Shown: one piece after another, positions 17,662 to 61,976 of the stretch
Layout of the letters: every line of letters starts with the position of its first letter
Position numbering within the stretch: the first letter of the stretch is position 1
Origin: Ylistrum balloti
Lineage: Eukaryota
Direction: 5' to 3'
Assembly: GCF_031769215.1 (NCBI RefSeq)
Contig: NW_026782141.1
Location: 186,001 to 250,000 of the forward strand
Length of the DNA: 64,000 nucleotides
Notes under the pieces: model-generated
Told to the model about the DNA's origin: nothing
Databases searched by the model: none
The model's input: the letters and a program-made list of their open reading frames with translations, nothing else
Program-made: the position numbers and the translations under genes

Positions 17662-17707
<46 letters not shown>

Positions 17708-36198: not shown

Positions 36199-39100
36199 TT
36201 ATTGATCCTTATCGTCTGTTGCTGTGTTCACAAAGGAGGACAACATCAACTCCAGCTCAGAATTCTCCTCTGCATCCTCCTGAAGTGATATAAATTGAAA
36301 TGACAAATCAATGTTTCAATAGTCAGGAAATCTTAATGATGTATTCATACATTTCAAAAGCATGCTGATTATTGGAATTGACCTTACCTAATGTTTTACA
36401 AACGACATCCTCTTACCTTTCACAACTGTCCTATCAACATTTTAAGCCAGAATGCCAAAACAAACATGAACTAGAGGGCTCTAACTCTTTTCGATATTTC
36501 AGCCAATGAGAAGGCCAGGATCGGTAAATTTTGTCTGAAAGGCCGTCACAATAGGCTATTACGTACTGAATACGTTTAGCCTTAAAATGAATTACCATCT
36601 GCCACATATATGTAATGTAGAAAAATTAGTGTTGAAGAAAGTTTTACAGTAGTTTTTAAGTTGGGGATGCGGAAAGGTTTAAATCTAAAGTATACTAAAT
36701 AACTAACTACAAAATTACGTGTTTACCTGATTCTCATTTAGTTCTTTCTCAGAGTCTTTTATAACCTCTCTGACTACAGTATCTTTGGTATCAACCTCCT
36801 GCTTTCTCCCTTTTCTATCACAGTGTTCTTCAAGGTCCTCAACAGCTTTAGCATCAAGGAGGTCTGGAGAAGACTCTGGGACTGCAGCGCAGTCAGTAGC
36901 ACTAGTGCACTCTGTGACCACTGTGTCCTCCTCATCTACCTCACCACCAGTGTGTTCTGTGACTCCTGGGTCCCTGCCATCCACCATCACAGAAGTGTCA
37001 ACACTAACCTCCATTTCTGTGTGTGACTCACTTTCTGATGAATCCTCATCCTCTTCCATCAGCTCTAAGTCTTGTTGAACTATGTGACCTTGTTGAGATG
37101 TAGATGCTTCCATGTCATCATTGTATCTACTAATGGCTGCAGTAACTTCATTTGTTTTACTTTCGTTTTGAACATGTGATGACATATCATCATTTTTGGT
37201 CCTTGAAAATATTCTTTTCCCAGCCTCTCCGATTTCAAAGTCACTGCTGTTTTCTGAATGACTAAAAAGTGATCTCCGTTTATGTGATGATGTGAAATTT
37301 TGGGAATCAGATTGCTGCTGTATGAAATTTGAAGACTTTTCAATGTCATGATGACCATTAAGGTCCTTATTTGTGTCCACTGTTTGATCTGTCTGACTGT
37401 CCTTACTGCCTCCCACAGTTAACACTTGAGTAACCACCACTGGGGCTTTAATACAAGGTGCACGAGGATGAATCAGTGCCTCTAGAGTTCTTTGTGCCTC
37501 CAAACAAATCTTGTTAACCTAAAACAGAAAACAAAATGTGCTTCTGTGAAATCATTCATCTCCGTGAAAGGAGTGAGGGGGTTAATCATAACCAACCAAT
37601 TCATACGTCCAATAACTGTTGAAGTTAATATAAGCAGATTTGTTGAGCTATACTTATCAAGTCTTCACAAAATAGCATTTTTTTTGAAAGACCACAAAAA
37701 CTGACTCCCAAAATATATCTGATTTTACAGCATTATCATGACCGAGGTAATTAGATGTTCTCAGATGTTTTATCATCAGTAACCCTGTTTGACAATTTTA
37801 AGATACAATTTATTTCCCTGCTTATTACATGAATATTTTCTGATTGTTGTTTCTATCACATATACTTGAAAGACAGTATCCACTTCAATTACAAATGTAC
37901 ACGATTGTGCTGACACTTTGGACTGCTGCAGTATGGAATATCATTAACAAAACCAAAAGTGTTTAAACTTGAAAGGTATTCAGGAAGATTTTCAATCATC
38001 TGCAATTTGTTGTCATCAGCTAAAGACACATTCTGAACAGTACATCAGTAAAATCCTGTCTATGCAGCATTCCCATCAAGGTAGAAAATGATGTAGCTAT
38101 TTAATCTTTAACAGGTGTAGGAATATACTGTACTTACCTTAAAGGACTGGTCATGAAGCCCCATCCTGAAGATCCCTAAGGAACAGTGGAGCGGTGAGGG
38201 TGTCGAGGGATGAGGCACTAGACAACAGGCCAGCAGTACCCTTAGTATCTGGTATCTACAACATGGGTCTCTGTAAGGAATCTCTGAGTTCTTCCTCTGT
38301 TGGAACATTGCAAGGCATGTCGAAATAGCAAACTCCTGTACATTCTACAAAACAATACATTTTATGATTAAGAAGCAAAAAATGTGTTTTTACTAAAGGT
38401 TGCTAATTAAAAGTTTCAATATAGAAATGTTACCAAGACAACTAACAAATCTTGAAAAAAACACTTGAGTATTATTTGTTACATTTTTCTCAGATGTCTT
38501 ACCTTTTGTATCTACTTGACATCTTACCTGTAAGTTTATAAAACTAATCTATAATCATACCAGAGGATTTTGGAGTGATATTTGAGAACCTACCTGTGGT
38601 ATTTTGTGTAATATCTAAGAACTTAACTGTGGTATTTTGTGTAATATCTAAGAACTTACCTGTGGTATTTTGTGTAATATCTAAGAATTTACCTGTGGTA
38701 TTTTGTGTAATATCTAAGAACTTACCTGTGGTATTTTGTGTAATATCTAAGAACTTACCTGTGGTATTTTGTGTAATATCTAAGAATTTACCTGTGGTAT
38801 TTTGTGTAATATCTAAGAACTTACCTGTGGTATTTTGTGTAATATCTAAGAACCTACCTGTGGTATTTTGTGTAATATCTAAGAACTTACCTGTGGTATT
38901 TTGTGTAATATCTAAGAATTTACCTGTGGTATTATGTGTAATATCTAAGAACCTACCTGTGGTATTTTGTGTAATATCTAAGAATTTACCTGTGGTATTT
39001 TGTGTAATATCTAAGAACCTACCTGTGGTATTTTGTGTAATATCTAAGAATTTACCTGTGGTATTTTGTGTAATATCTAAGAACCTACCTGTGGTATTTT

Positions 39101-42100
39101 GTGTAATATCTAAGATTTTACCTGTGGTATTTTATGTGATATTTGTGACTTACCTGTAAAGGTTTTGGACATCCAAGATCTTTTGGTCATATAATATATA
39201 AGATCACCTGTAATATATTTTGGACACAGTCTCACTGTATTTTATTTCAGACATGAGATCTTACCTGTAATATTTTCTGTGACATTTGAGATCCAATTGC
39301 TGTGAGCCACCAGTAAAGGGCTGTAAATAAAAGGGATGCAATCTTATTCAGTATTTTTGCGGCAATGGAATACTAAATGGTCTAGATTAATTAGGACAGG
39401 AGTCACAGGACTAAAAAAGAGTTTATACACCTAATATTAGATAACTTTTACTGAAATTCAGGCCTACTGGGGGGTGGGCTGAACGTGAGTAATAACAATT
39501 AAAAATATCACAGAAGAAACATTTATATTCATTGTGATCCAATGCTTAAAATTCCTAGAAAACAGCATGATCAACAGCAATAGTCATTTAGAGGCAGACA
39601 CAATCTACCCAAACACCTTGGATCTTCACAAAAGGTCCCAAAGTCTAATATCTAATGACTGAGCTACCATGGCCCAAACACATATTATTATAACCACTGT
39701 ATGGACGGGATAGGTAGAGAACATTTACCCTCTAATGCTGCTGACACCAGATCTGCCCCTGCCAACCTGTCAATCTTCCTCAGGGAGCTAATACCCTGTG
39801 ATATTTCCTGGTAACCTGTCTTCTTTTTCTTGCGAGGAGGCGGTTGAGGATCAGACTTACTGGTACTATCTCCTGCACCACTAGAAAGCTGACAACACAA
39901 GTTATCACAAAGTCATTTCCTTATTCTCATCATCAATATTTCTTCAGCAGCTGTTATACAAGTCATTCATGTTGGTATGGATTAGAATTATAAAACAAAT
40001 CAAGAGTAATTATCATATCTGTAAAAAGATATCAATGAAACAAACTGATAAGTTATTTGAAAACAGCCAAGTTTGTAAACCCTTTGAGAATTGTACCAGT
40101 CTTTGATTTCGATTCAATGATCACATGAGAAGTTAGTTGATAAAATGTAAAACAACACAGTAAATAACAAACAAATGAAGTGTTGATCCAGTCATGATTT
40201 AAAGACATCATTTGAAAACATTCATGCAGGTAGATCATGTTATATTTTACTTACAAAAACATGGATAGACCTAAATTAAGTTCCATATTTAAATAATTTA
40301 TGTCATGAAGCAACACTACTCTCAGCACGCAAACTCAAGAATCATTATTTCATTCAAACTTGAAAGTACAGCACTTTTATTGAATCCCTGACAGTGCCAC
40401 AGTAAAATCTTTTTTAATATCCATAATTTTTCTCAAAATGTGTAAAGCTGACTTCATGGATACATATAACTCAATCAATAGGCTTATTCTAATTTTATCA
40501 GTTATAGTGAATGTTGATTTAGTTGATTCAGAGTACCCACAATATAAATAAAAATAAAACACCCACAAAAACTAATGATTTCACAGTATACAGTTCACCA
40601 CCATACTTACCATGTACAGTACTTATACACTGTAACTATCAATAGACTTGACAGTTGTAAGCAATTCTAATGAGACTGCAGTAGATATGGGTGGGCTTAT
40701 TACCAGGCATACTCCCATATAATTACTGTACCTTGAATGTATCAAGTTGCATTCCAGCATCATGAAGTATCTCCTCACATAAGGCTGAGTCTTCAGTGGA
40801 TGTCTCTACGAAGGTAACTGTCATTTGGAACCATAGTGTCAGACAGTTGTATACACTCTTCCTCAGTTCACTGTTGTTAAATTATAAATATCATGATGTA
40901 AACTATGATCATTGTCAGCTATCTTTATATAATACAGAATATATTTACAGAATAATACACAAAACATCACATTTACATTAGGATCATCATCATGGACAGT
41001 CAGTAAATACAAAGAAATTTGTGTGATTTATCATCAGTTCATCCTCAATACTTCAGGGTTACCATCACTATCACTCTCCGCATCCCTTGAAATTTTATTA
41101 TAGCAAAAACAGTCTGTAGTTTGGTGTGATGTGATATGTGTAGGGTGGGTTCTGTCAGTAGTTAGGTTTGGTGTGTTACCTGTAGGGTGGGGTCTATCAG
41201 TAGTTAGGTGTGGTGTGTTACCTGTAGGGTGGGGTCTATCAGTAGTTAGGTGTGGTGTGTTACCTGTAGGGTGGGGTCTATCAGTAGTTAGGTGTGGTGT
41301 GTTACCTGTAGGGTTGGGTCTATCAGTAGTTAGGTGTGGTGTGTTACCTGTAGGATGGGGTCTATCAGTAGTTAGGTGTGGTGTGTTACCTGTAGGGTGG
41401 GGTCTATCAGTAGTTAGGTGTGGGGTCTGACCGTAGTTTGTTTTGGTGTGTTACCTGTTGGGTGGAGTCCTTAGTAAAGTGTGTTACCTGTAGGGGCGCG
41501 CCTGCCCGTAGTTTGGAGTGGAATGACTCCAGACTAGTTCTTGTACCAGCAGAGTCAGTACCAACTTGGTGTGAGGCAGAAGGTGAAGTTTACAGCTACA
41601 AAATAGATAAATCATGTAAAATCGGACACCATAACATCAGTATGGTATGCTATAGGTAAATCTGGGAATTCATTAATATACTCTAGCAGAAACAAATAGC
41701 CCAGCTCACCTGGATATTTCAGTCATCAAGACAAAATCTCTCATTTGCATAGCATGAATATTTCTAATTTCTACCACACTAAGTTCCACAAAAAGACCAA
41801 TATAATTTCATTTTCTGGTGAAATAGAAGTTTCAATGCAAAATAAGTGAAATAAAAACAACAAAATTTTCACTTGTTGTTCCCATTGGCTAGCCAAACAT
41901 TTATACAAGTTCAACAATGAGCTTTACTCATTTATTAGTTCTACAGATGACTGTGTAATGGTCATAACCTTGACCTAAAAATGAATAAGCCATTGGCATG
42001 CACAGACTCTTGTAACTGTGCACTGACACACCAAAACCAGTTCATGAGTAATGTAACAAAACACCTACAACAGATCAGGGAAAAAGATCACACTGTGTTG

Positions 42101-45100
42101 TTCAGAGAAATCAGTTCATATATGTGTATCAATATAGAACTTCCTAACAGAATATGGCTATTATCAATAATTACCATTTGATGAGGTTGTAGAGGAGAGA
42201 GATGGCTAATCTGTGTATAGATGGTATAAATCCAGCTAATAAAAGTCGCTCTGTAGAAGGTCTAGCTACCTGAAAGGAGAAACGTTACACTGTTTATTAT
42301 CACAAGAAAAGCTGACTTCTGGTAGAAAATCCAAACGGTCATTACTCTCCAAAAATTGTAAAATAAAAATACTATTCAGTGAAAACAAAATAAGCATCTG
42401 GACAGGACTACGTGGGGACAAACCTTCATTAGACCTAAATACTCACCTGCATTTTACAGTTAACAGACAGGATCCTACAGACGAGGTTCAGAACTATGTG
42501 GGGACAAATCTTCATTAGACCTAAATACTCACCTGCATTTTACAGTTAACAGACAGGATCCTACAGACGAGGTTCAGAACTATGTGGGGACAAATCTTCA
42601 TTAGACCTAAATACTCACCTGCATTTTACAGTTAACAGACAGGATCCTACAGACGAGGTTCAGAACTATGTGGGGACAAAACCTTCATTAGACCTAAATA
42701 CTCATCTGCATTTTACAGTTAACAGACAGGATCCTACAGACGAGTTTCAGAACTATGTGGGGACAAATCTTCATTAGACCTAAATACTCATCTGCATTTT
42801 ACAGTTAACAGACAGGATCCTACAGACGAGGTTCAGAACTATGTGGGGACAAAACCTTCATTAGACCTAAATACTCATCTGCATTTTACAGTTAACAGAC
42901 AGGATCCTACAGACGAGGTTCAGAACTATGTGGGGACAAATCTTCATTAGACCTAAATACTCATCTGCATTTTACAGTTAACAGACAGGATCCTACAGAC
43001 GAGGTTCAGAACTACATGGGACAAAACCTTCATTAGACCTAAATACTCATCTGCATTTTACAGTTAACAGACAGGATCCTACAGACGAGGTTCAGAACTA
43101 TGTGGGGACAAACCTTCATTAGACCTAAATACTCACCTGCATTTTACAGTTAACAGACAGGATCCTACAGACAAGGTTCAGAACTATGTGGGACAAAACC
43201 TTCACTAGACCGAAATACTCACCTGCATTTTACAGTTAACAGACAGGATCCTACAGACGAGGTTCAGAACTATGTGGGAACAAAACCTTCATTAGACCGA
43301 AATACTCACCTGCATTTTACAGTTAACAGACAGAATCCTACAAACAAGGTTCAGGACTGTGTGGGACGTAACATTCAGCAGTGCCAAATACTAACCAGCA
43401 TTTTACAGTTAACAGACAGGATCCTACAGACAAGGTTCAGGACTGTGTGGGACATAACCTTCAGCAGTGCTAAATACTCACCAGCATTTTACAGTTAACA
43501 GACAGGATCCTACAGACAAGGTTCAGGACTGCCTGGGCGGGAATTTTCACAAGAGCTTGGAAACTCTCACTGTAAACAATAATATTTACATAGCAAGGAC
43601 TCCACATAAACCAAACAGAAGTAATTGTAAACTGAAGAAAAGTAAATAATATCCATCACATTTCCATTATGACAAATATAGCAACAGTATTGTCAAAATT
43701 ATTGTAAGTTGTGTCTACATGAACAGGCTGCTGATAATTAATGAAATGTGCAATATTTTAGTTGTAAGATATGAATAAGACGAAATGTGTAGGAAACAAA
43801 AATACATATATAACTGCTTTGCTGTCAATTTTTGTTGATGAATAACACAATTGTATAAGGATTCAACATAACGCTTGCCTGCAAAGCTGGATCATTAATT
43901 TGGCAATGAATGGTTGAGTGTCACTCACAAACAGAATAGAATAACAGATTAGTAAACACATCATGTAGTAAATTTTTAAAATATTTTATATTACAGATCA
44001 AAATATCCGAGTTCAAATCCAAAAATTAACAGAGTTTTGTCGAAACTAACTGAAATGAATACCATTCCATGTATTATCTCCATAACAAATACTACTGGTG
44101 TTAGAAAATTAGGCCTTTAAGTTAAACAAAAGTCATAAGAACTTAATAAAAAAGAATCAACCCAGGTGAACTTTAACACAGGTAAAGCAAAGTTATTTTG
44201 GCAAACAATCTTGTGATTTATTCCAGAAAGCTACCAAATGAATTTTCTGACCTTGCCATGTCAAGACAGAAACACAGCATTATGGAAACAATTGTACATC
44301 TCATCTGTCCTGTTTTGCTAGTTTGAAAATAGTCAAATTGATATCACATGTATTTCTCCTCAAAAAAAATCTTCAAATTTCCAGGTACACGTTAAATAAT
44401 AACTGCATAACAGTACCAAAAATATGCCCACAGAAAAATAACACCACATTCTCACTTCTGTTGCAGGTGAGACAAAGATGTTATGCTCACAAAAATGAGA
44501 AACATATTTTTAAAAAAAAAATTACTTCTTTATATAAAATGTCAAAATCTAAAGAAATACCTGAGTAAGGCCTGCAGGCAGCCAGAGTAGGCGTGGCACC
44601 TGGACATAAGGGCATGGTACCTTTGAGGGTATGATGTGGGCAAATCCTCCAGGGGTATGACCCTTGTTCCATCCTCCCCAGTGACAGGTGACATGACTGT
44701 AGGATAAAGAGTACCAAAATGAAGTATTTGGACAATGTTCTTAAAAATCAAGGCCATGATGACAAATGTCATTAATAGCACAGATCACAAGTCAATCAAG
44801 TTAAATGTCACTGATGGCAGAGGTCAAAGGTCACTGGTCATTACATGTTACACATCAGGTTTCCTAAGCATTTTTTTTTTGGAAGTTATTTATTTTGTTA
44901 GAAATGCATGAAATTGGGACTGGATGACTCTAGTACAATAAGTGATTTCCTTCAGTTCAACCTAATTCATTAGAACTTGAACTTGCATGCTGGAAGCATG
45001 AAAAAGATTGTTTGTTTTATTAGCACACTGTATAGCTAATAATATTCATGTGCAATATTTGTTTCATAAAATTTAGCACAAAATCAAATACAAACATTTT

Positions 45101-48100: not shown

Positions 48101-51100
48101 TATGCAATATTCTGAGTAAACAGATAATGAGGAATGAAAGAAATGCATTTTTCAAAAAAAAATATCTATAAACTTTAACTATTCACTGAATTTTGTATAG
48201 AGATGACATCAATGAGAACACCAGTACATACATTATGCCAAGTGATTAGCAACATTTTGGTGACTCCTTTCACATCTCTTATCACTGCTTTGGGATAGGG
48301 CAATTTTGACTCATTTTGAGAAGTGAAATGGGAAGGAAGATTTCAAGTGTACATTGTAAAGAACAAGTTTTTGGAAATTTAACTTTAATAAGAAGTAATT
48401 CTGATTTGTAATGGGGCCCTTTAATGACCACAAAAGCCCTGATCAGCTGTGGCAGAAAACTGTGAACAAGTCTTTATGTATGGCTGACATTGAAAGCCTG
48501 TGAAAAGGTATCATATATGATAGAGATCGTACACTGGTATTAATTCCAGAATGTTGATGATGGTTTCCATGGCAATAGTACAGGAAAAATCATGTAGATT
48601 TTGTATATAATTAACTCAGATATATTTTTATCATCAAGATTATTGCTATACCCTCTTTTTCATATACTTACCTTTGCTTTGCTGAGTTCAGACAGGTGTT
48701 GATATGACCAATAATTTCATGCAATTTTCCTGGCTTCTGTTAGGAAAAAAAAAGCAAATGTTATCGTAATATATTTCACGATTTAACTAGGATCACCAGT
48801 GTAATGGCAATGACTCGTTCATGGACAATTTTTCATCATGTCTAAAGACTTTGAATTTTGATCAATATGATTGAGAGACTGGGCTAGGGAGTGCAAACCA
48901 GAAAACTCCAGACTGAATCGGGAAAGTTGGCAGGTATGCATGTGGCCCGAATCTGCATCAAAGGTATGCATATCTGTAGACGACACAATGAGTAAATGAC
49001 GTCATATTGAATGTGTGTGTGTACGTGAAAATTATGCAACGATGAATTCCAAAAAATCACCTGAATTTAGACAAATATGCCAAAAGCATTAATTTCACTG
49101 CCTTACATGATTCGTCATCCATTTTTTCGACCTGCATGAAAAAAGTGTGACCGGACCTCACCTGGATGTTTGCCCTATACATTCAGATTTGACTACATAG
49201 CCAAATCTACATATATACCATATTTATTCCAATAAACGCCCCGTCTCTAATAAACGCCCCACATCTGTTTTCTCAGTAAATTTCAACAACTCAGGAGTCA
49301 GGTTACAAAGCTTACTTTTTAATAAATTTCAAATTCCTGGTATCCATGAACATGAACAAATGAATTTTGGCACAGGAAGATTACACTGTCATGACATGTA
49401 CACAAGTAATATCAATTTAATCCACGGTTCATTTCAATATACTGCAGGCCTAACGGCCGGGACTGCCGTACAAACTACTGTCTTCACTTTCACCAGTCTC
49501 GCTTTCACTCAGTTCTATTTGTGGAATAGAAGGCGCGTTCACATCACCCATTAAATTTTGCAAAACGTCATCTGCAGCTTGGACATCCTTTTCACTAAAC
49601 CCCTGAAATTCCTCATCGTCAGAATCATGCTGGAAAATATGATCCACGCTACCGTCCAGCGACTTTGTGATACCGCATTTTTTTAATGATCTTCTGATTG
49701 TGTATGGGCTAATGCTATCCCATGCTGTCTTGACCCAAGACAACATTACAGCTTTAGATGGGGCTTTACGATTCCCTGCTTTGGTTTTCTCAATGGGGCC
49801 ACTGAAACACCATTTGTCATAGAACTCTCAAAGTTTTTGTTTGAAGGGTTTATTCCACGACACATCGGCTGGCTGTAGCTTACATGTGCGTCCTCCGGGT
49901 ATAACACAGATGTCTAAATGATATTTCTGATGAACCAGTTTTTTTACATCTTCAGTAAGATGACCACGGAAAGCGTCCCATACTAATAACCGCCTAGCTG
50001 TATTATTCACACCCCAGAGTTTTTTTAACCAAAATTTTATACTTTCTTCGTTTGCCCAGGATTTTTGTCCGGCCCCGTACATGTATACCACAATACCTCT
50101 TAGTATATCATCTTTCGGATGGGGACAAATGCCTGGCATGTGCACAAGGAGGGGGGCGATTTTAGTCCCATTGGCATATGCTGCCAGTGTCACCGATATT
50201 TTTTGTTTTTCGTGGCCAGTACTGTAAACTCTGACCTCCTTTTCCCCTTTATTGCCAATGTCGATTTTCCTGGCATGTCAAACCACACCGCGGTTTCGTC
50301 CATGTTAGCGATATGGCTATTGGGGTATTCTCGTAGCCGACGCATTCTTAACACGAAATTCAAAAAACTGTCAATACAATCATCAATTAATGAAACTTCA
50401 TGTTGTGCCACATGCATAGATCGCTTGAACGAAATGTTATGTCTCTTTTTGAATTTAGAAAACCATCCATATGAGGCTTTGAACGATTGACTACCATTTG
50501 CCTTATGCATACGCAGGGCCTAAAATCGCAATGCTTTCCCACTCACTCGTATTCTGGCCTCCCGTCTGTCCTGTAGCCATCTCATCAGATTTTTGTCAAT
50601 ATCTTCATATCTGACATGCCTCTCACCTCATTTACAGCGTTTAGATGTTTTAGAAAGATTTTTTAATTTTTCTTTGTTTTGACACCAGTCCTGCACTTGT
50701 TTTCTGTCAACACGAAACACTTTCGCGGCGAAGGCGATTACTTTAAGCTTGAAAGCAGTGTCGTAATTTCGTTTTGTCCCAGACATTGTTATCAGGTATG
50801 TGGGATTTATTAAGAAACAGACTGACTTATATACCACTGTGTTTTTTTATTTTGTTATGCAAACTAGGCCTACAAGCAATGATGAACATTGTACGTTTTT
50901 GACTGAAGCTGACACGATTGTTATCGTGTCATTTCATACAAGAATTCAGGTTATCAGAATGCAATTGACAACAATGTTTAAAGCTACAACGATGTTGGAA
51001 TTACTGCAATTTTCAAATGCATTCTTTGCTGAGTAATTCGTTAGTTTGTTAAACAACGTTTTTAAGTGGCAGCCATGGCATGTCACGACCAACAAATTAT

Positions 51101-52331: not shown

Positions 52332-55300
52332 ATGGAGACTGATATACCTGGAAATTTATCTGACAACAACTTACCTGGAAATTTACTTCACAATGACTTA
52401 CCTGGAAATATTACTCACAATGAAGATGAGACGAAAAATCAAAATGACAGTTCATTAAATCAAGGTCTTTCGGATCATTCTATATTGTTAAGAAGCCAAC
52501 CAAAAATATTTGATCAACAGGAAATGATGGTTGATTCTTTAATCAGCAATAGCAATCAAGTAGACAATAAAGAAGACAAAGATCATGGGGAAAGTCATAA
52601 CACGGACATCTTTGTAGAAAGTCAAGGTCAAAATGAAGAAAGTGAGAGTAGCGGAATACAGCCAAGGAAGGAATTCGGAAAAGATGGAGATGTAAATTTA
52701 GATAATGAACAAGGGTGTACAGAAGACATCGTTGATAATGAAAGGACTATGATCACATTAACAGAAAGAGGAGAAAAACAGTCATTTAGTCAAAAGGACA
52801 CAGTAATTGCATGTACATCAGAGGAAGGTTCCAATAATGATATTCCTGTAGTGTTTGCAGACTCTGATAAGCAAAACTTAACATTTACTTTAAATTCAAA
52901 CACAGAAGGATTGGAACCGCCAATGAAAAGATTTAGAGCTGAAAAAGATTCAGAATCAGTGACACCAAATGATGTGTTAGAATCTGTGTCTGATAGAGAA
53001 ACCAGTGGAACAGAAACTTTGGTTGATAATTCTGTTCAGTCTGAACCTGTGTGTATGCAGAAAGAAGATCAGGCCTTTGACTCTGCTGATGGAAAAGATA
53101 TGAAAAGTGATGGCCAACAGGACATGCCCAGCACAAGTCAGACAGAGGAGGATGACATGCCCTACTTCAGGTATAGAGGAAAACAAACAACATAATATAT
53201 CATTTCATCATAAAAATATAATCAGACAACAGCTCAGTTAGTAGAGCATCAGAATTCCGAATCCCAGGTGAAGATCTGGGGTGTGTGGTTCGATCCCTCC
53301 TCTGGCCAATTTTTTTTTTGTGTCTCTGGTATCTGAGGTCACTGATCATCATGTTCTGTCATAGTTGTGATCTTGGGCAAGAACGCTTTGATTTGATTGT
53401 CTGCCTTTGAAAGCATGCTTTACTGATCAGTATTTTTACCCTTCAAAACAGTTTTGAAAGAGACAAATGTAGTTTTGCACATATTTGGTATGATTTTCTG
53501 CTTTTTAAACTCATCAGATAAGGATTTCATTTGAGATACCTAGATATTTTTCTGCAGCTCAAAAGACCAAATCTCTGTCTTCCTGGTATTATTTTAAATA
53601 ATAACTAGAAATATAGAGACTATCCACTATACATTCTGTACATGTATCTATATAATGTATGCTTTAAAAGTATCTGTCAAAATTATTTACAAAGGGGTTT
53701 TAATTTTTTGTCATGTCTCCTTTATAAATTAATGTGTAATATGTAAATCATAAGTTAATGAGATACCCTATATATGTGTAGAATTTACATTTGTAGTCAG
53801 GAGGGTATGGTACTTACAGAAAAACCAGAGTTTATTACTGATGCCATGACAGAGTTCAACACAACAGATGATAATTTCCTCAAGGGCTGCAAATGGTGAG
53901 TGTAAATTAAAAAAATTGTAATAAAGTTGTTTTACAAATATGTTGGCAAGCTCTGAAGTTTTTAACCTGCTTTCATGTTATTTATAAAACAAATATATTC
54001 ATACTAACTTTCATAAGATGTTTGGTAGATTGGAAATCTTGGAATTTTTTCTTAGGGTCCAACTAAACGATAAGATCTTGTCATGAATTAAAGTTCATCA
54101 GTAATTTTTGTAGTAATTTTTCATGCGATTACAGAATATGATTTCAAAAATTTTGATTAGTCTCAATACCAAGAAATATAAACTCAAATATCTGAGTTCC
54201 AGAAATCACTGGTTCTAGGAGAAAAATGATGGAAGAATTATTTCAGTTATTTCATTATCTGATTTTGTTACTAGCTAGCGTGAACATTCATTTCATTTAT
54301 TTTTTTCTATGTAAGTTGATGGTTTTAATTAAATGTGGAAATACGTGGAAAATATGTAGTCAGGTATTGTTATTCTCGTATTTTATATTTTAACAATGTT
54401 TTTTTACCCCATTTAGGGCCCCTGATGGGACATGTCTTCTCACCAACAGCAATGATAACTGTCTAAGACTGTTCAACCTTCCTCAACCTCTGTATGAGGG
54501 ACAAAATGAGGGGATCCCTGAAATGGTACTTTTCCTTACAGCTTACAGATATAAAATAAAATTTATGTTTATTTAATGATTTTTGATAATTAACTATAAC
54601 CTTACTTGAATACTAAATCATGCTGTAATAATGATATTTAAATACTGGGTTGTCGATAAATTAAAATCATTTATGTTCCTAAATTACTAATAAATCAAAC
54701 AATAGATATGTCAGTACACCTATTCTAAATAAGTGTAATATTCCATTCACGTGATTGAATGTTTAATTCCTTTGTTATCAATGATTATAATCATCATCAG
54801 AAAATATCAAATAAAGAAAAAAAAAATGATATGAATTGTTTTTGCCACATTTGACTACAGTTCAACTACACCTAAAACATTGGTTTTCTCCTCTCAGCCC
54901 TTTATTCATTAGATATTATTGTGATAAGAATAAGTGATAAACTCTTATTTCGTTTACTAGCAATATTTATTCAGTAAATCAACAAATTAACATAAAAAAA
55001 TTTGTGCTGTGATGTCCAGAGGACCAATGCGTAACTACCGAGAAGTAGACAGAACAAGAATATAACACTCGTTGACATTTCTACAGAAATTTATTATAGA
55101 TTTGGATGGGTATATTAGAAATGCTATGGAAATTTAGGTAAATAGTTGAGGGGTGGGCTTATTGCCAAATAGACATGGTTTATACCTACACTGTACAATA
55201 TTAATGATAAAGTTTGGATGTGTTTTTATTTCAGACCTCAGCCTTGAAATTTTCAGAAACTGACACCATCTATGACTACTGCTGGTATCCTAAAATGGTG

Positions 55301-60292: not shown

Positions 60293-61864
60293 TATTTTTT
60301 CGTTTTAAATGTACCGCAAAAACATTATTGGCTCAAGCTATTTTTAGCCCAAGTGTTTTGTGCCAATTTTCTGAAATACTTATGTGTACATATGTCTTCT
60401 GGTTTTCTGGATTTTTTTTTTAAAAATTCAGAACAAATAGTGCAATAACACAATTAAAGGTGTTCATTGGTGTCTACAGTGGTGGTGGAGGAGATCAAAA
60501 TATCATGTCATATCTTAGACATTTAACTGTGTAGAAATGGCATTTACTTATTTTATAAATGCAATATCTATGAAGTTCTATAAGGTATATTCACATTTTC
60601 TGCACATTTTGCTGTTTGTATATATTCATTCACTTTAAACTTAATTAAGTTGTTAATTAGCTACTGTATCTAGCAATTTGGAAACACATACGGCAGATTA
60701 AGCTCGCTCACTCAATTTGCATAGCTGCCATTTTGGATTTTGAACAAAATTTATAGGTATAGCAGGAGAACAAAGAATGGGCGCATTATTGAAATTAATG
60801 GGGCCAGGCACATTTTAACCAGTTTTCTGTATGCATTGATGGAAAGAGATGATCAATATGTTATTGTTTCGAGGTTCCTATACAGTCTTTGTCATCATGT
60901 TACAAATTGGCATGATATCACAGTTTTATGTAATATACTGAACTGATTTTAAGGTTCCGGAGACCTTTGAAATGATTGATAATGTATTTGTGCTCAAAAG
61001 TTAAAGGGGCCAGCAACCTGCCAGTAACTAGGCTTATAACTTGCAGGAATGGTATGATGAAAATCAAAATTGTAATGAGTGAGGTATTCTGAACCTGATG
61101 TCAACCTTTTTTCCCAATAATAATTAAATTGCTACAGTATGAGAGGCCATCAGGGGGGCTATCTCAGTGAGTGCTTGTGAAGGTATAGAAAGTCTACCAC
61201 AGTTCAGATGTAAATGTGACTGAAAAATTTTTATTTTGAATACTACTAAACAAGTGCAATTGTTGATAAAATAGTATAAATTTAAACTTACATGCTCATT
61301 CATTAAACTGCATTTACAAATAAAAAAGAATAAAGGTTTTTTTTGCCTCTGTGTCTAATATTGAATACAGAGTAAGTAAATAAAGAAAAGAATTATTTGT
61401 ACCCCCCTCATCCTGCCTGTTTTCATGCTTGCCACCTCTCAAGTTTTGATGACATCACAAATATTTTATCTTATGAATATTCATGAGTTGAGTGAGCCTA
61501 TTTCTCCACACGAATCATTTTGACGGTAACCGTGAAACGTTAATCGACTCCATAACTACAATTGTGACATCATGGTAGTCACACCAGTAAAAGTATCTAC
61601 TGTAGAACTTTTTACATAGATCTGTTTTGGTAGGTATATATCACAGATATCTCATGCAAAAGTAAATGTAATAGGGAGGATGCACATTGAAGCTGTTTTT
61701 GTGTTGTTGGAATTTGATGGTCTCCAACAGTTTCTTTTTTCATCTGTTTTCTGATATTTGTATGCCTTTTTTATTCTGTTTGTTTTGACTTTTATGTACA
61801 CAAGTGATAAATTTTAAATCCTAAATATGTCCAGGTTTTTGCTAAAAATAATATAATATTTCTT

Positions 61865-61976
61865 TAACACTAAGCTTGTGTGAGTAAAACTGAGTCATGA
61901 GTAGCTATCAGTTGAGTTAACACTAAGCTTGTGTGAGTAAAACTGAGTCATGAGTAGCTATCAGTTGAGTTAACAC
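61865..61976. repeat. Perfect 53-bp tandem duplication
   Basis: TAACACTAAGCTTGTGTGAGTAAAACTGAGTCATGAGTAGCTATCAGTTGAGT x2 + TAACAC. Confidence 0.95.

What the first reader, a model, noticed from the sequence alone, without database searches (positions are those of the whole stretch)
42412..43540. PELP1 intron 9: twelve extra copies of half an exon, six with a better donor than the real one and a contiguous block of five with GT>AT knock-out
Seen: the true donor at 43481 is CTG|GTGAGT. Moving into the intron, one copy has CTG|GTTAGT, three have CAG|GTGAGT, five consecutive copies have CAG|ATGAGT (dead), and three more have CAG|GTGAGT. The copies keep ~45 nt of coding sequence nearly intact. Using any decoy includes GTG AGT ATT TAG, an in-frame stop, in a long multi-exon gene and so predicts NMD. 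The block of dead donors could reflect spread of one mutated unit by unequal exchange, or selection against mis-splicing (inference).
Basis: seen in the sequence. Interest (0 to 1): 0.8.

Follow-up and report, generated by a model that had tools for sequence, protein, structure and literature searches.

The report
Exon-end/splice-donor minisatellite in scallop PELP1
A scallop's PELP1 gene has copied the last 47 bases of exon 9 plus its splice signal twelve times into the next intron; this is a real but already known kind of repeat ("mirage" minisatellite), and the run of five "dead" signals looks like one neutral mutation spread by repeat turnover, not like selection.

Summary
On the minus strand there are 13 tandem units of 86-87 bp (42408-43528). 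Unit 0 is the true end of exon 9 with donor CTG|GTGAGT (G at 43481). The copies read 1x CTG|GTTAGT, 3x CAG|GTGAGT, 5x CAG|ATGAGT and 3x CAG|GTGAGT. The gene is PELP1, coding exon 9 of 17. Reading past the true donor meets TAG at the fourth codon.

The six live decoys do score higher than the real donor. The array is absent from intron 9 of Pecten, Mizuhopecten and Argopecten, so it is lineage-specific. A 7-nt direct repeat (AGTCCTG) flanks it, which fits a slippage origin.

The GT>AT block fits one mutation spread by unit and dimer duplication: units 6 and 8 are identical, units 7 and 9 differ at one base, and units 10/11 differ from 6/8 only at that base. Donor columns are no more variable than other columns, here or across 12 such arrays. 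Six perfect decoys survive. Four other individuals also carry AT units, one at about 20-25 times single-copy depth.

No RNA data exist for this species. In Argopecten, a transcript uses the first donor despite a similar PELP1 array. The class is known (amphioxus mirages, human F7 intron 7), and this scan has already met it repeatedly on other DNA of this genome.

The parts
43482..43569 (-). PELP1 coding exon 9 (88 nt). Its last 47 nt are the exon-derived part of the repeat unit.
   Evidence: The translation aligns to human PELP1 residues 330-386 across the exon 9/10 junction and to Pecten PELP1 residues 287-316. The acceptor TTTACAG|T at 43569 is conserved in Pecten and Mizuhopecten.
43476..43484 (-). 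Authentic donor CTG|GTGAGT (first intron base 43481). T at -2 is fixed by the Leu codon.
   Evidence: Orthologous donors are CTG|GTAAGT (Pecten) and TTG|GTACGT (Mizuhopecten), at the same phase-0 position. Scores: 8.9 bits and -11.1 kcal/mol.
43470..43472 (-). In-frame TAG, the fourth codon after the authentic donor (GTG AGT ATT TAG).
43357..43442 (-). Unit 1, a recent copy of unit 0 (4 differences), with the weakened donor CTG|GTTAGT.
   Evidence: U1 duplex -7.1 kcal/mol.
43098..43356 (-). Units 2-4, live decoys CAG|GTGAGT. Unit 2 is a chimera of the unit-0 type (5' part) and the array type (3' part).
   Evidence: Scores: 10.8 bits and -14.1 kcal/mol.
42666..43097 (-). Units 5-9, donor +1 G>A (CAG|ATGAGT). 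Units 6 and 8 are identical, and units 7 and 9 differ at one base, so 6/7 and 8/9 form a duplicated 173-bp dimer.
   Evidence: (period 173 scores as high as 86). The AT-donor word is seen in four other individuals.
42408..42665 (-). Units 10-12, live decoys CAG|GTGAGT. Units 10 and 11 are identical and differ from units 6/8 only at donor +1.
42403..42409 (-). Terminal 7-nt partial copy AGTCCTG. The same 7-mer starts the duplicated segment in the exon (43524-43530), so this is microhomology flanking the array.
42270..42402 (-). Unique 3' part of intron 9, with a strong acceptor (TTTCTCCTTTCAG|G, 12.8 bits).
42175..42269 (-). PELP1 coding exon 10 (95 nt).

Best explanation
This is a 'mirage'-type minisatellite, meaning a tandem repeat born from the exon 9/intron 9 boundary of PELP1 in this scallop lineage.

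Origin (inferred): an 86-bp segment (47 nt of exon tail, the donor, and 39 nt of intron) lay between two copies of the 7-mer AGTCCTG. It was duplicated by slippage or unequal exchange and then amplified to 12 extra units.

Turnover (shown): the units keep turning over. Units 6/7 and 8/9 are a duplicated dimer, units 10 and 11 are identical, and unit 1 is a recent re-copy of the real junction. The decoys, free of the Leu-codon constraint, drifted from CTG to CAG and so became nearer to consensus than the real site.

The AT block (inferred): a single G>A change at donor +1 arose in one unit. The same turnover carried it to five adjacent central units and onto two or three sequence backgrounds. 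It is a common variant whose copy number differs widely between individuals.

Splicing (inferred): productive splicing most likely still uses the first donor, the only one that keeps the reading frame. This is what the F7 intron 7 repeat and an Argopecten PELP1 transcript show. Any transcripts spliced at a decoy carry a premature stop and would be lost. The array itself has no function.
For: Array anatomy and register.
PELP1 identity and exon model.
Lineage-specific: there is no repeat in intron 9 of Pecten or Argopecten, and Mizuhopecten has an unrelated 34-bp array there.
Flanking microhomology.
Outgroup polarisation: CTG is ancestral and CAG derived. The array keeps the ancestral C at unit column 10, while the real exon has a derived synonymous T.
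Turnover signatures.
No excess variation at donor columns.
Other arrays keep GT in 185/194 units.
Four other individuals carry the array. AT units are at about 25x, 2.1x and 1.6x single-copy depth in three of them, and on a third background in the fourth.
First donor used despite a comparable array in Argopecten PELP1 exon 15.
Literature: mirages do not disturb splicing (PMC3087553, PMC3902484). F7 IVS7 pseudo-sites are silent behind the most upstream donor (PMC1557585).
Against: No RNA of this species was available, so use of the first donor and the silence of the decoys are inferred, not shown.

In the F7 minigenes, pseudo-sites of exactly CAG/gtgagt did compete (about 70-90% use) with a weaker authentic site. 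Some mis-splicing, and therefore some selective cost, cannot be excluded here.

Among the 12 arrays examined, this is the only one where a high-frequency variant hits G+1. The one strongly expanded allele seen (X1) is made of AT units. Both facts are compatible with chance, but they also fit weak selection.
Confidence: 0.8

Rival explanations
1. One reading: the live perfect decoys cause harmful mis-splicing, so units with a dead donor (GT>AT) have been favoured and are the ones allowed to expand.
For: The decoys are stronger than the real site. CAG/gtgagt pseudo-sites compete in F7 minigenes. The first decoy (unit 1) is also weakened. The AT word is at about 20-25x single-copy depth in individual X1, while no high-depth live-decoy word was laid there.
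Against: One mutational event is enough to explain the block. Donor columns are not enriched for variation, in this array or across 12 arrays. Six perfect decoys persist at both ends of the array. Other arrays in the same gene and its relatives keep 95% of their GTs, and up to 31 of 31 donor 9-mers are identical in one array. Gaps in contig coverage prove nothing.
Confidence: 0.12
2. The array is a functional splicing device: either tunable unproductive splicing (AS-NMD) that sets the PELP1 level, or a cluster of U1-binding sites that helps define exon 9 or protects the long intron.
For: Up to 13 U1-complementary sites lie within 1.1 kb. Donor-anchored arrays recur at PELP1 introns 11 and 14 in three scallop genera.
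Against: The array is absent from intron 9 of three other scallops. Its copy number and composition vary widely between individuals. 5 of 12 sites have lost G+1. There is no transcript evidence. The acceptor-like sites at unit starts score below nearly all real acceptors.
Confidence: 0.05
3. Assembly artefact: the array, or its unit order, comes from mis-assembly of a repeat.
For: Tandem arrays are error-prone in assemblies. Short-read contigs of other individuals cannot span this one.
Against: In all four other runs the flank contigs stop at the same two array edges. Internal unitigs match individual reference units exactly, including AT donors and unit-specific junctions.
Confidence: 0.03

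Closest known systems
Amphioxus 'mirages': minisatellite-like tandem duplications of exon/intron boundaries (Adh3, globins BflGb6/9, TnC, PGBD5), as described in PMC3087553 and PMC3902484
   Same: Tandem units span an exon/intron boundary and carry the splice signal. Unit length is comparable (10-160 bp). They show length polymorphism, concerted evolution of inner units with diverged edge units, and the normal mRNA is reported as undisturbed.
   Different: This one is in a mollusc, not a cephalochordate. The decoys are closer to the donor consensus than the authentic site. A block of units has lost G+1. Splicing could not be checked in this species.
Human F7 intron 7 37-bp VNTR, whose first unit spans the exon 7/IVS7 junction (Borensztajn et al. 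2006, PMC1557585)
   Same: The authentic donor is followed by 5-9 tandem pseudo-donors, and the copy number is polymorphic. It offers an experimentally supported mechanism: the most upstream functional donor is chosen, and pseudo-sites are functional but silent.
   Different: The F7 pseudo-sites are identical to the authentic site (consensus value 74). Here they are better (CAG|GTGAGT, the sequence that reached about 70-90% use when engineered into F7). The unit is 86 bp, not 37 bp, and keeps 47 nt of coding sequence.
Other exon-end/donor arrays in the same scallop genome and in scallop PELP1 genes
   Same: Same architecture, same genome-wide tendency, and same gene.
   Different: Most of those arrays have short units (33-45 bp) and keep GT in about 95% of units. 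The intron 11 and 14 arrays are shared by three genera, whereas this intron 9 array is lineage-specific and has a high-frequency GT>AT variant.

Membership tests
Mirage minisatellite (tandem duplication of an exon/intron boundary) | Head-to-tail tandem repeat of minisatellite unit size | tested here: met
   Period 86, 13.1 copies, 94% matches.
Mirage minisatellite (tandem duplication of an exon/intron boundary) | The first unit is the authentic exon end plus intron start of the host gene | tested here: met
   Unit 0 is the last 47 nt of PELP1 exon 9 plus the donor. The exon is confirmed against human, Pecten, Mizuhopecten and Argopecten PELP1.
Mirage minisatellite (tandem duplication of an exon/intron boundary) | The copies carry the splice signal | tested here: met
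   7 of 12 copies keep GT and 6 are CAG|GTGAGT.
Mirage minisatellite (tandem duplication of an exon/intron boundary) | Length instability or polymorphism | tested here: met
   The depth of the AT-unit word relative to single-copy flanks is about 25x, 2.1x and 1.6x in three individuals, against 5 copies in the reference.
Mirage minisatellite (tandem duplication of an exon/intron boundary) | Regular splicing is not disturbed (the mRNA uses the authentic site) | not testable with these tools
   No RNA run or transcript fragment of this species was found. Indirect support: the orthologues' proteins read through the same junction, and an Argopecten transcript uses the first donor before a similar array.
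Regulated unproductive splicing element (AS-NMD / poison splice sites) | Conservation of the element across related species | tested here: not met
   No such array in intron 9 of Pecten, Mizuhopecten or Argopecten.
Regulated unproductive splicing element (AS-NMD / poison splice sites) | Transcripts that use the alternative sites | not testable with these tools
   No RNA data.
Cassette pseudo-exon array (acceptor + 47 nt + donor per unit) | A usable 3' splice site at each unit start | tested here: not met
   The pseudo-acceptors score -9.9 to +1.7 bits, against a median of 8.0 for 38 real scallop PELP1 acceptors.

The most novel reading that the evidence does not exclude
Array composition is under selection for splicing fidelity. 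Because the live decoys (CAG|GTGAGT) are strong enough to compete with the codon-constrained real donor (CTG|GTGAGT), only units whose donor is dead (GT>AT) can expand to high copy number, as in individual X1. This locus would then be a natural, segregating experiment on the fitness cost of tandem decoy splice sites.
Probability: 0.1. Interest if true: 0.55.

Novelty: new member of a known kind. Interest (0 to 1): 0.25.

Why it matters
On its own it matters little. It is one more splice-junction minisatellite in a genome that has many, and nothing shows that it does anything.

Its modest value is as a natural test case for how a 5' splice site is chosen. The authentic donor is held below consensus by a Leu codon. 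It is followed by a segregating mix of perfect and dead decoys, and their numbers differ at least ten-fold between individuals.

RNA from genotyped animals could show whether the 'most upstream donor wins' rule established for human F7 also holds in a mollusc when the decoys are the stronger sites. The comparison across four scallop PELP1 genes also shows that such arrays are born and lost at different donors of the same gene, which argues for a mutational by-product and against a device.

Tried and rejected
A word search with the exon 9+10 peptide found no transcript fragments. Decoy use therefore remains untested.

2. Pfam on the 61-aa exon 9+10 peptide gave nothing. Identity came from PDB PELP1 chains and from the scallop orthologues.

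3. My own idea that each unit is a 47-nt poison exon (a branch-point-like CTAAT, a pyrimidine run and AG before the exon-like part) was rejected. The acceptor scores fall below nearly all real acceptors, and the 39-nt gaps between units are very short for an intron.

4. Argopecten isoforms X1 and X2 were checked for alternative use of array donors. They differ only at the N-terminus.

5. An apparent 21-nt microexon in the Mizuhopecten intron 14 array is an artefact of matching a repeated exon tail. The protein alignment shows no insertion.

6. The first automated cutting of the comparison arrays picked wrong anchors and one script crashed. Only searches are used.

7. The lower variability of the exon-derived part of the unit (p=0.003 over all units) fades within the array proper (p=0.09). 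It is expected if only the real exon is constrained, so I did not read it as constraint on the copies.

Full report
**What is there.** On the minus strand, TRF reports one array at 42403-43530: period 86, 13.1 copies, 94% matches, score about 1870. Reading it and cutting it in register gives 13 units of 86-87 bp. Each unit is 47 nt identical or nearly identical to the end of an exon, then a donor motif, then 39-40 nt of intron. Unit 0 is the real junction, CTG|GTGAGT, with first intron base 43481. The copies read CTG|GTTAGT (unit 1), CAG|GTGAGT (units 2-4), CAG|ATGAGT (units 5-9) and CAG|GTGAGT (units 10-12).

**The gene.** The exon 9+10 peptide aligns collinearly across the junction to human PELP1 residues 330-386 (E = 4e-4 for 61 aa). 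A no-length-filter search with the 267-codon exon at 37518-36718 found an 868-aa protein, P0001. Its source names it PELP1-like of Pecten maximus, and it hits Pfam RIX1. It maps onto 17 coding exons of the window's minus strand, and the array follows coding exon 9.
- Exon 9 is 43569-43482 (88 nt) and exon 10 is 42269-42175 (95 nt).
- The PELP1 proteins of Pecten, Argopecten and Mizuhopecten all read ...SVNCKTL|T(S/A)RPST... through this junction.
- The intron sits in phase 0 after a Leu codon in every species examined.
- Reading past the real donor gives GTG AGT ATT TAG. Any decoy use would therefore place a stop at about codon 320 of about 860, with seven further introns downstream. NMD is then a reasonable inference, but it is not shown.
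- The organism is a pectinid scallop. Earlier scan notes name Ylistrum balloti, which I did not verify.

**Strength of the sites.** Pairing to the conserved 5' end of U1 (textbook sequence) and a weight matrix from 38 real PELP1 donors of three scallops give:

| Donor | U1 duplex (kcal/mol) | Matrix score (bits) | Percentile among real donors |
|---|---|---|---|
| Real donor, CTG\|GTGAGT | -11.1 | 8.9 | 39th |
| Six live decoys, CAG\|GTGAGT | -14.1 | 10.8 | 66th |
| Unit 1, CTG\|GTTAGT | -7.1 | 8.7 | 39th |
| AT units, CAG\|ATGAGT | -7.4 | 4.0 | 3rd |

The decoys are better only at position -2. There the real site is tied to T by the Leu codon (CTG or TTG in all outgroups).

**Origin and history.** Intron 9 of Pecten (about 850 bp) has no repeat at all. 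Argopecten has none either, and Mizuhopecten has an unrelated 34-bp array further inside the intron. The 86-bp array is therefore specific to the window's lineage.
- The 7-mer AGTCCTG starts the duplicated segment in the exon (43524-43530) and recurs just after the last unit (42403-42409). A short direct repeat of this kind is what slippage or unequal exchange needs, so this origin is inferred.
- The outgroups show that CTG is ancestral and CAG derived. At unit column 10 the array keeps the ancestral C, while the real exon and units 1, 2 and 4 carry a derived synonymous T. The array therefore predates that substitution, and the units next to the exon were re-copied or converted later.
- Unit 1 differs from unit 0 at only 4 positions, while units 2-12 differ from unit 0 at 10-14.

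**The GT>AT block.** Units 6 and 8 are identical, and units 7 and 9 differ at one base. This makes 6/7 and 8/9 a duplicated 173-bp dimer, which is why TRF scores period 173 as highly as 86. Units 10 and 11 are identical and differ from units 6/8 only at the G/A of donor +1. The A lies on two 3' backgrounds in the reference, and on a third in another individual. One mutation moved by unequal exchange or conversion explains this.

Tests for special behaviour of the donor columns were negative:
- Within this array, 3 of 9 core columns vary against 20 of 78 others (p = 0.69). Within units 2-12 it is 1 of 9 against 14 of 78 (p = 1.0).
- With 9 shared variant columns, the chance that at least one hits the GT dinucleotide is 0.19.
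- Across 12 donor-bearing arrays (four in the window, three in the Pecten locus, five in the Mizuhopecten locus), GT columns vary in 9 of 24 cases against 185 of 470 (p = 1.0).
- High-frequency variants hit GT in 1 of 24 cases against 44 of 470 (p = 0.71). About 2 are expected and 1 is seen, namely this one.
- The other arrays keep GT in 185 of 194 units, so there is no general purge of decoy donors.
- Six perfect decoys remain here, at both ends of the array.

**Other individuals.** Five DNA-like runs from two studies and two organism labels hold the locus. Four were laid on 1,901 letters, within the operators' limit.
- In all four, the flank contigs stop at 42453 and 43488, as expected where a repeat begins.
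- Internal unitigs match single reference units exactly.
- AT-donor words are present in X1, X2 and X4, and X5 reads A at the unit 4 donor.
- The 59-nt AT word occurs five times in the reference. Its depth is about 25, 2.1 and 1.6 times the single-copy flank depth in X1, X2 and X4.
- A second X1 unitig, which spans a unit 6/7 junction, is at about 20 times.

The array is therefore real, the AT variant is common, and copy number is very unstable. Contigs cannot give the array structure, and gaps in their coverage prove nothing.

**Splicing.** No RNA run and no transcript fragment of this species could be found. Indirect evidence comes from Argopecten. Its PELP1 has its own array after exon 15, with 88-114-bp units that repeat about 27 codons plus ATG|GTAAGT. 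A spliced transcript contig (L004, from SRR19746224) matches the first copy at 99% and the decoys at 88-95%, then continues into exon 16.

Published work points the same way:
- Amphioxus mirages do not disturb splicing (PMC3087553, PMC3902484).
- In human F7 intron 7 the most upstream functional donor is used exclusively when pseudo-sites have consensus values up to 91.
- In the same work, engineered CAG/gtgagt pseudo-sites were used at about 70-90% against a weak authentic site with a value of 74 (PMC1557585).

On that paper's scale TGG/gtgagt scores 91 and CAG/gtgagt scores 100. The scallop's real CTG|GTGAGT should therefore lie near 91-92 (inference). The gap to the decoys is much smaller than in the F7 experiment, but some decoy use cannot be excluded.

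**Context.** Donor-anchored arrays after exons 11 and 14 are present in the window, Pecten and Mizuhopecten with homologous units, but are absent in Argopecten. Earlier notes of this scan report many such arrays in unrelated genes of this genome and file them as mirages. I took the name and the F7 lead from those notes, and checked both in the literature and in the orthologous loci.

**Verdict.** The object is a lineage-specific, polymorphic member of a known class of repeat, most likely a tolerated by-product. The untested residue is whether the six perfect decoys are ever used.

Noticed in passing
window 41100-41460 and 38560-39160; L001 15446-16801 and 18733-18990; L002 11851-13521 and 16257-16649: The donor-anchored arrays after PELP1 exons 11 (42-bp unit, CAG|GTAACA) and 14 (33-bp unit, CAG|GTAAG) have homologous units at the same donors in the window, Pecten maximus (32 and 8 copies) and Mizuhopecten yessoensis (40 and 12 copies). 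They are absent from Argopecten irradians (L003). In Pecten all 31 donor 9-mers of the intron 11 array are identical, while 38% of the other columns vary.
   Followed up: partly
L003 13801-14320: Argopecten PELP1 has its own array after exon 15, with 88-114-bp units that repeat the last ~27 codons plus ATG|GTAAGT about four times. A transcript contig (L004) uses the first copy.
   Followed up: yes
L002 2083-3021 and 3969-4228: In Mizuhopecten PELP1 the same 36-bp unit (AAG|GTAAGG / AAG|GTAGGG, the exon 2 end plus donor) forms an array right after exon 2. It also forms a second, larger array (about 26 copies) upstream in intron 1.
   Followed up: no
window 49453-50846, minus strand: Remains of a pogo/Tc5-type DNA transposon lie in PELP1 intron 1. 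Open segments in different frames hit the Brinker DNA-binding domain, HTH_Tnp_Tc5 and DDE_1.
   Followed up: partly
window 42276 and 42381: All four other individuals differ from the reference at these two intron 9 positions (G>A on the + strand). 42276 lies in the pyrimidine tract of the exon 10 acceptor, where the change is C>T on the gene strand. X2 also has a synonymous change in exon 9 at 43539.
   Followed up: no
window 17663-17705: An uninterrupted run of 43 G.
   Followed up: no
window 52345-52423 and 61864-61976: Two further short tandem repeats whose units contain donor-like motifs on the minus strand (GTGAGTAAAT with CAGGTA, and GTGAGTAAAA). I did not examine how they relate to exons.
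   Followed up: no
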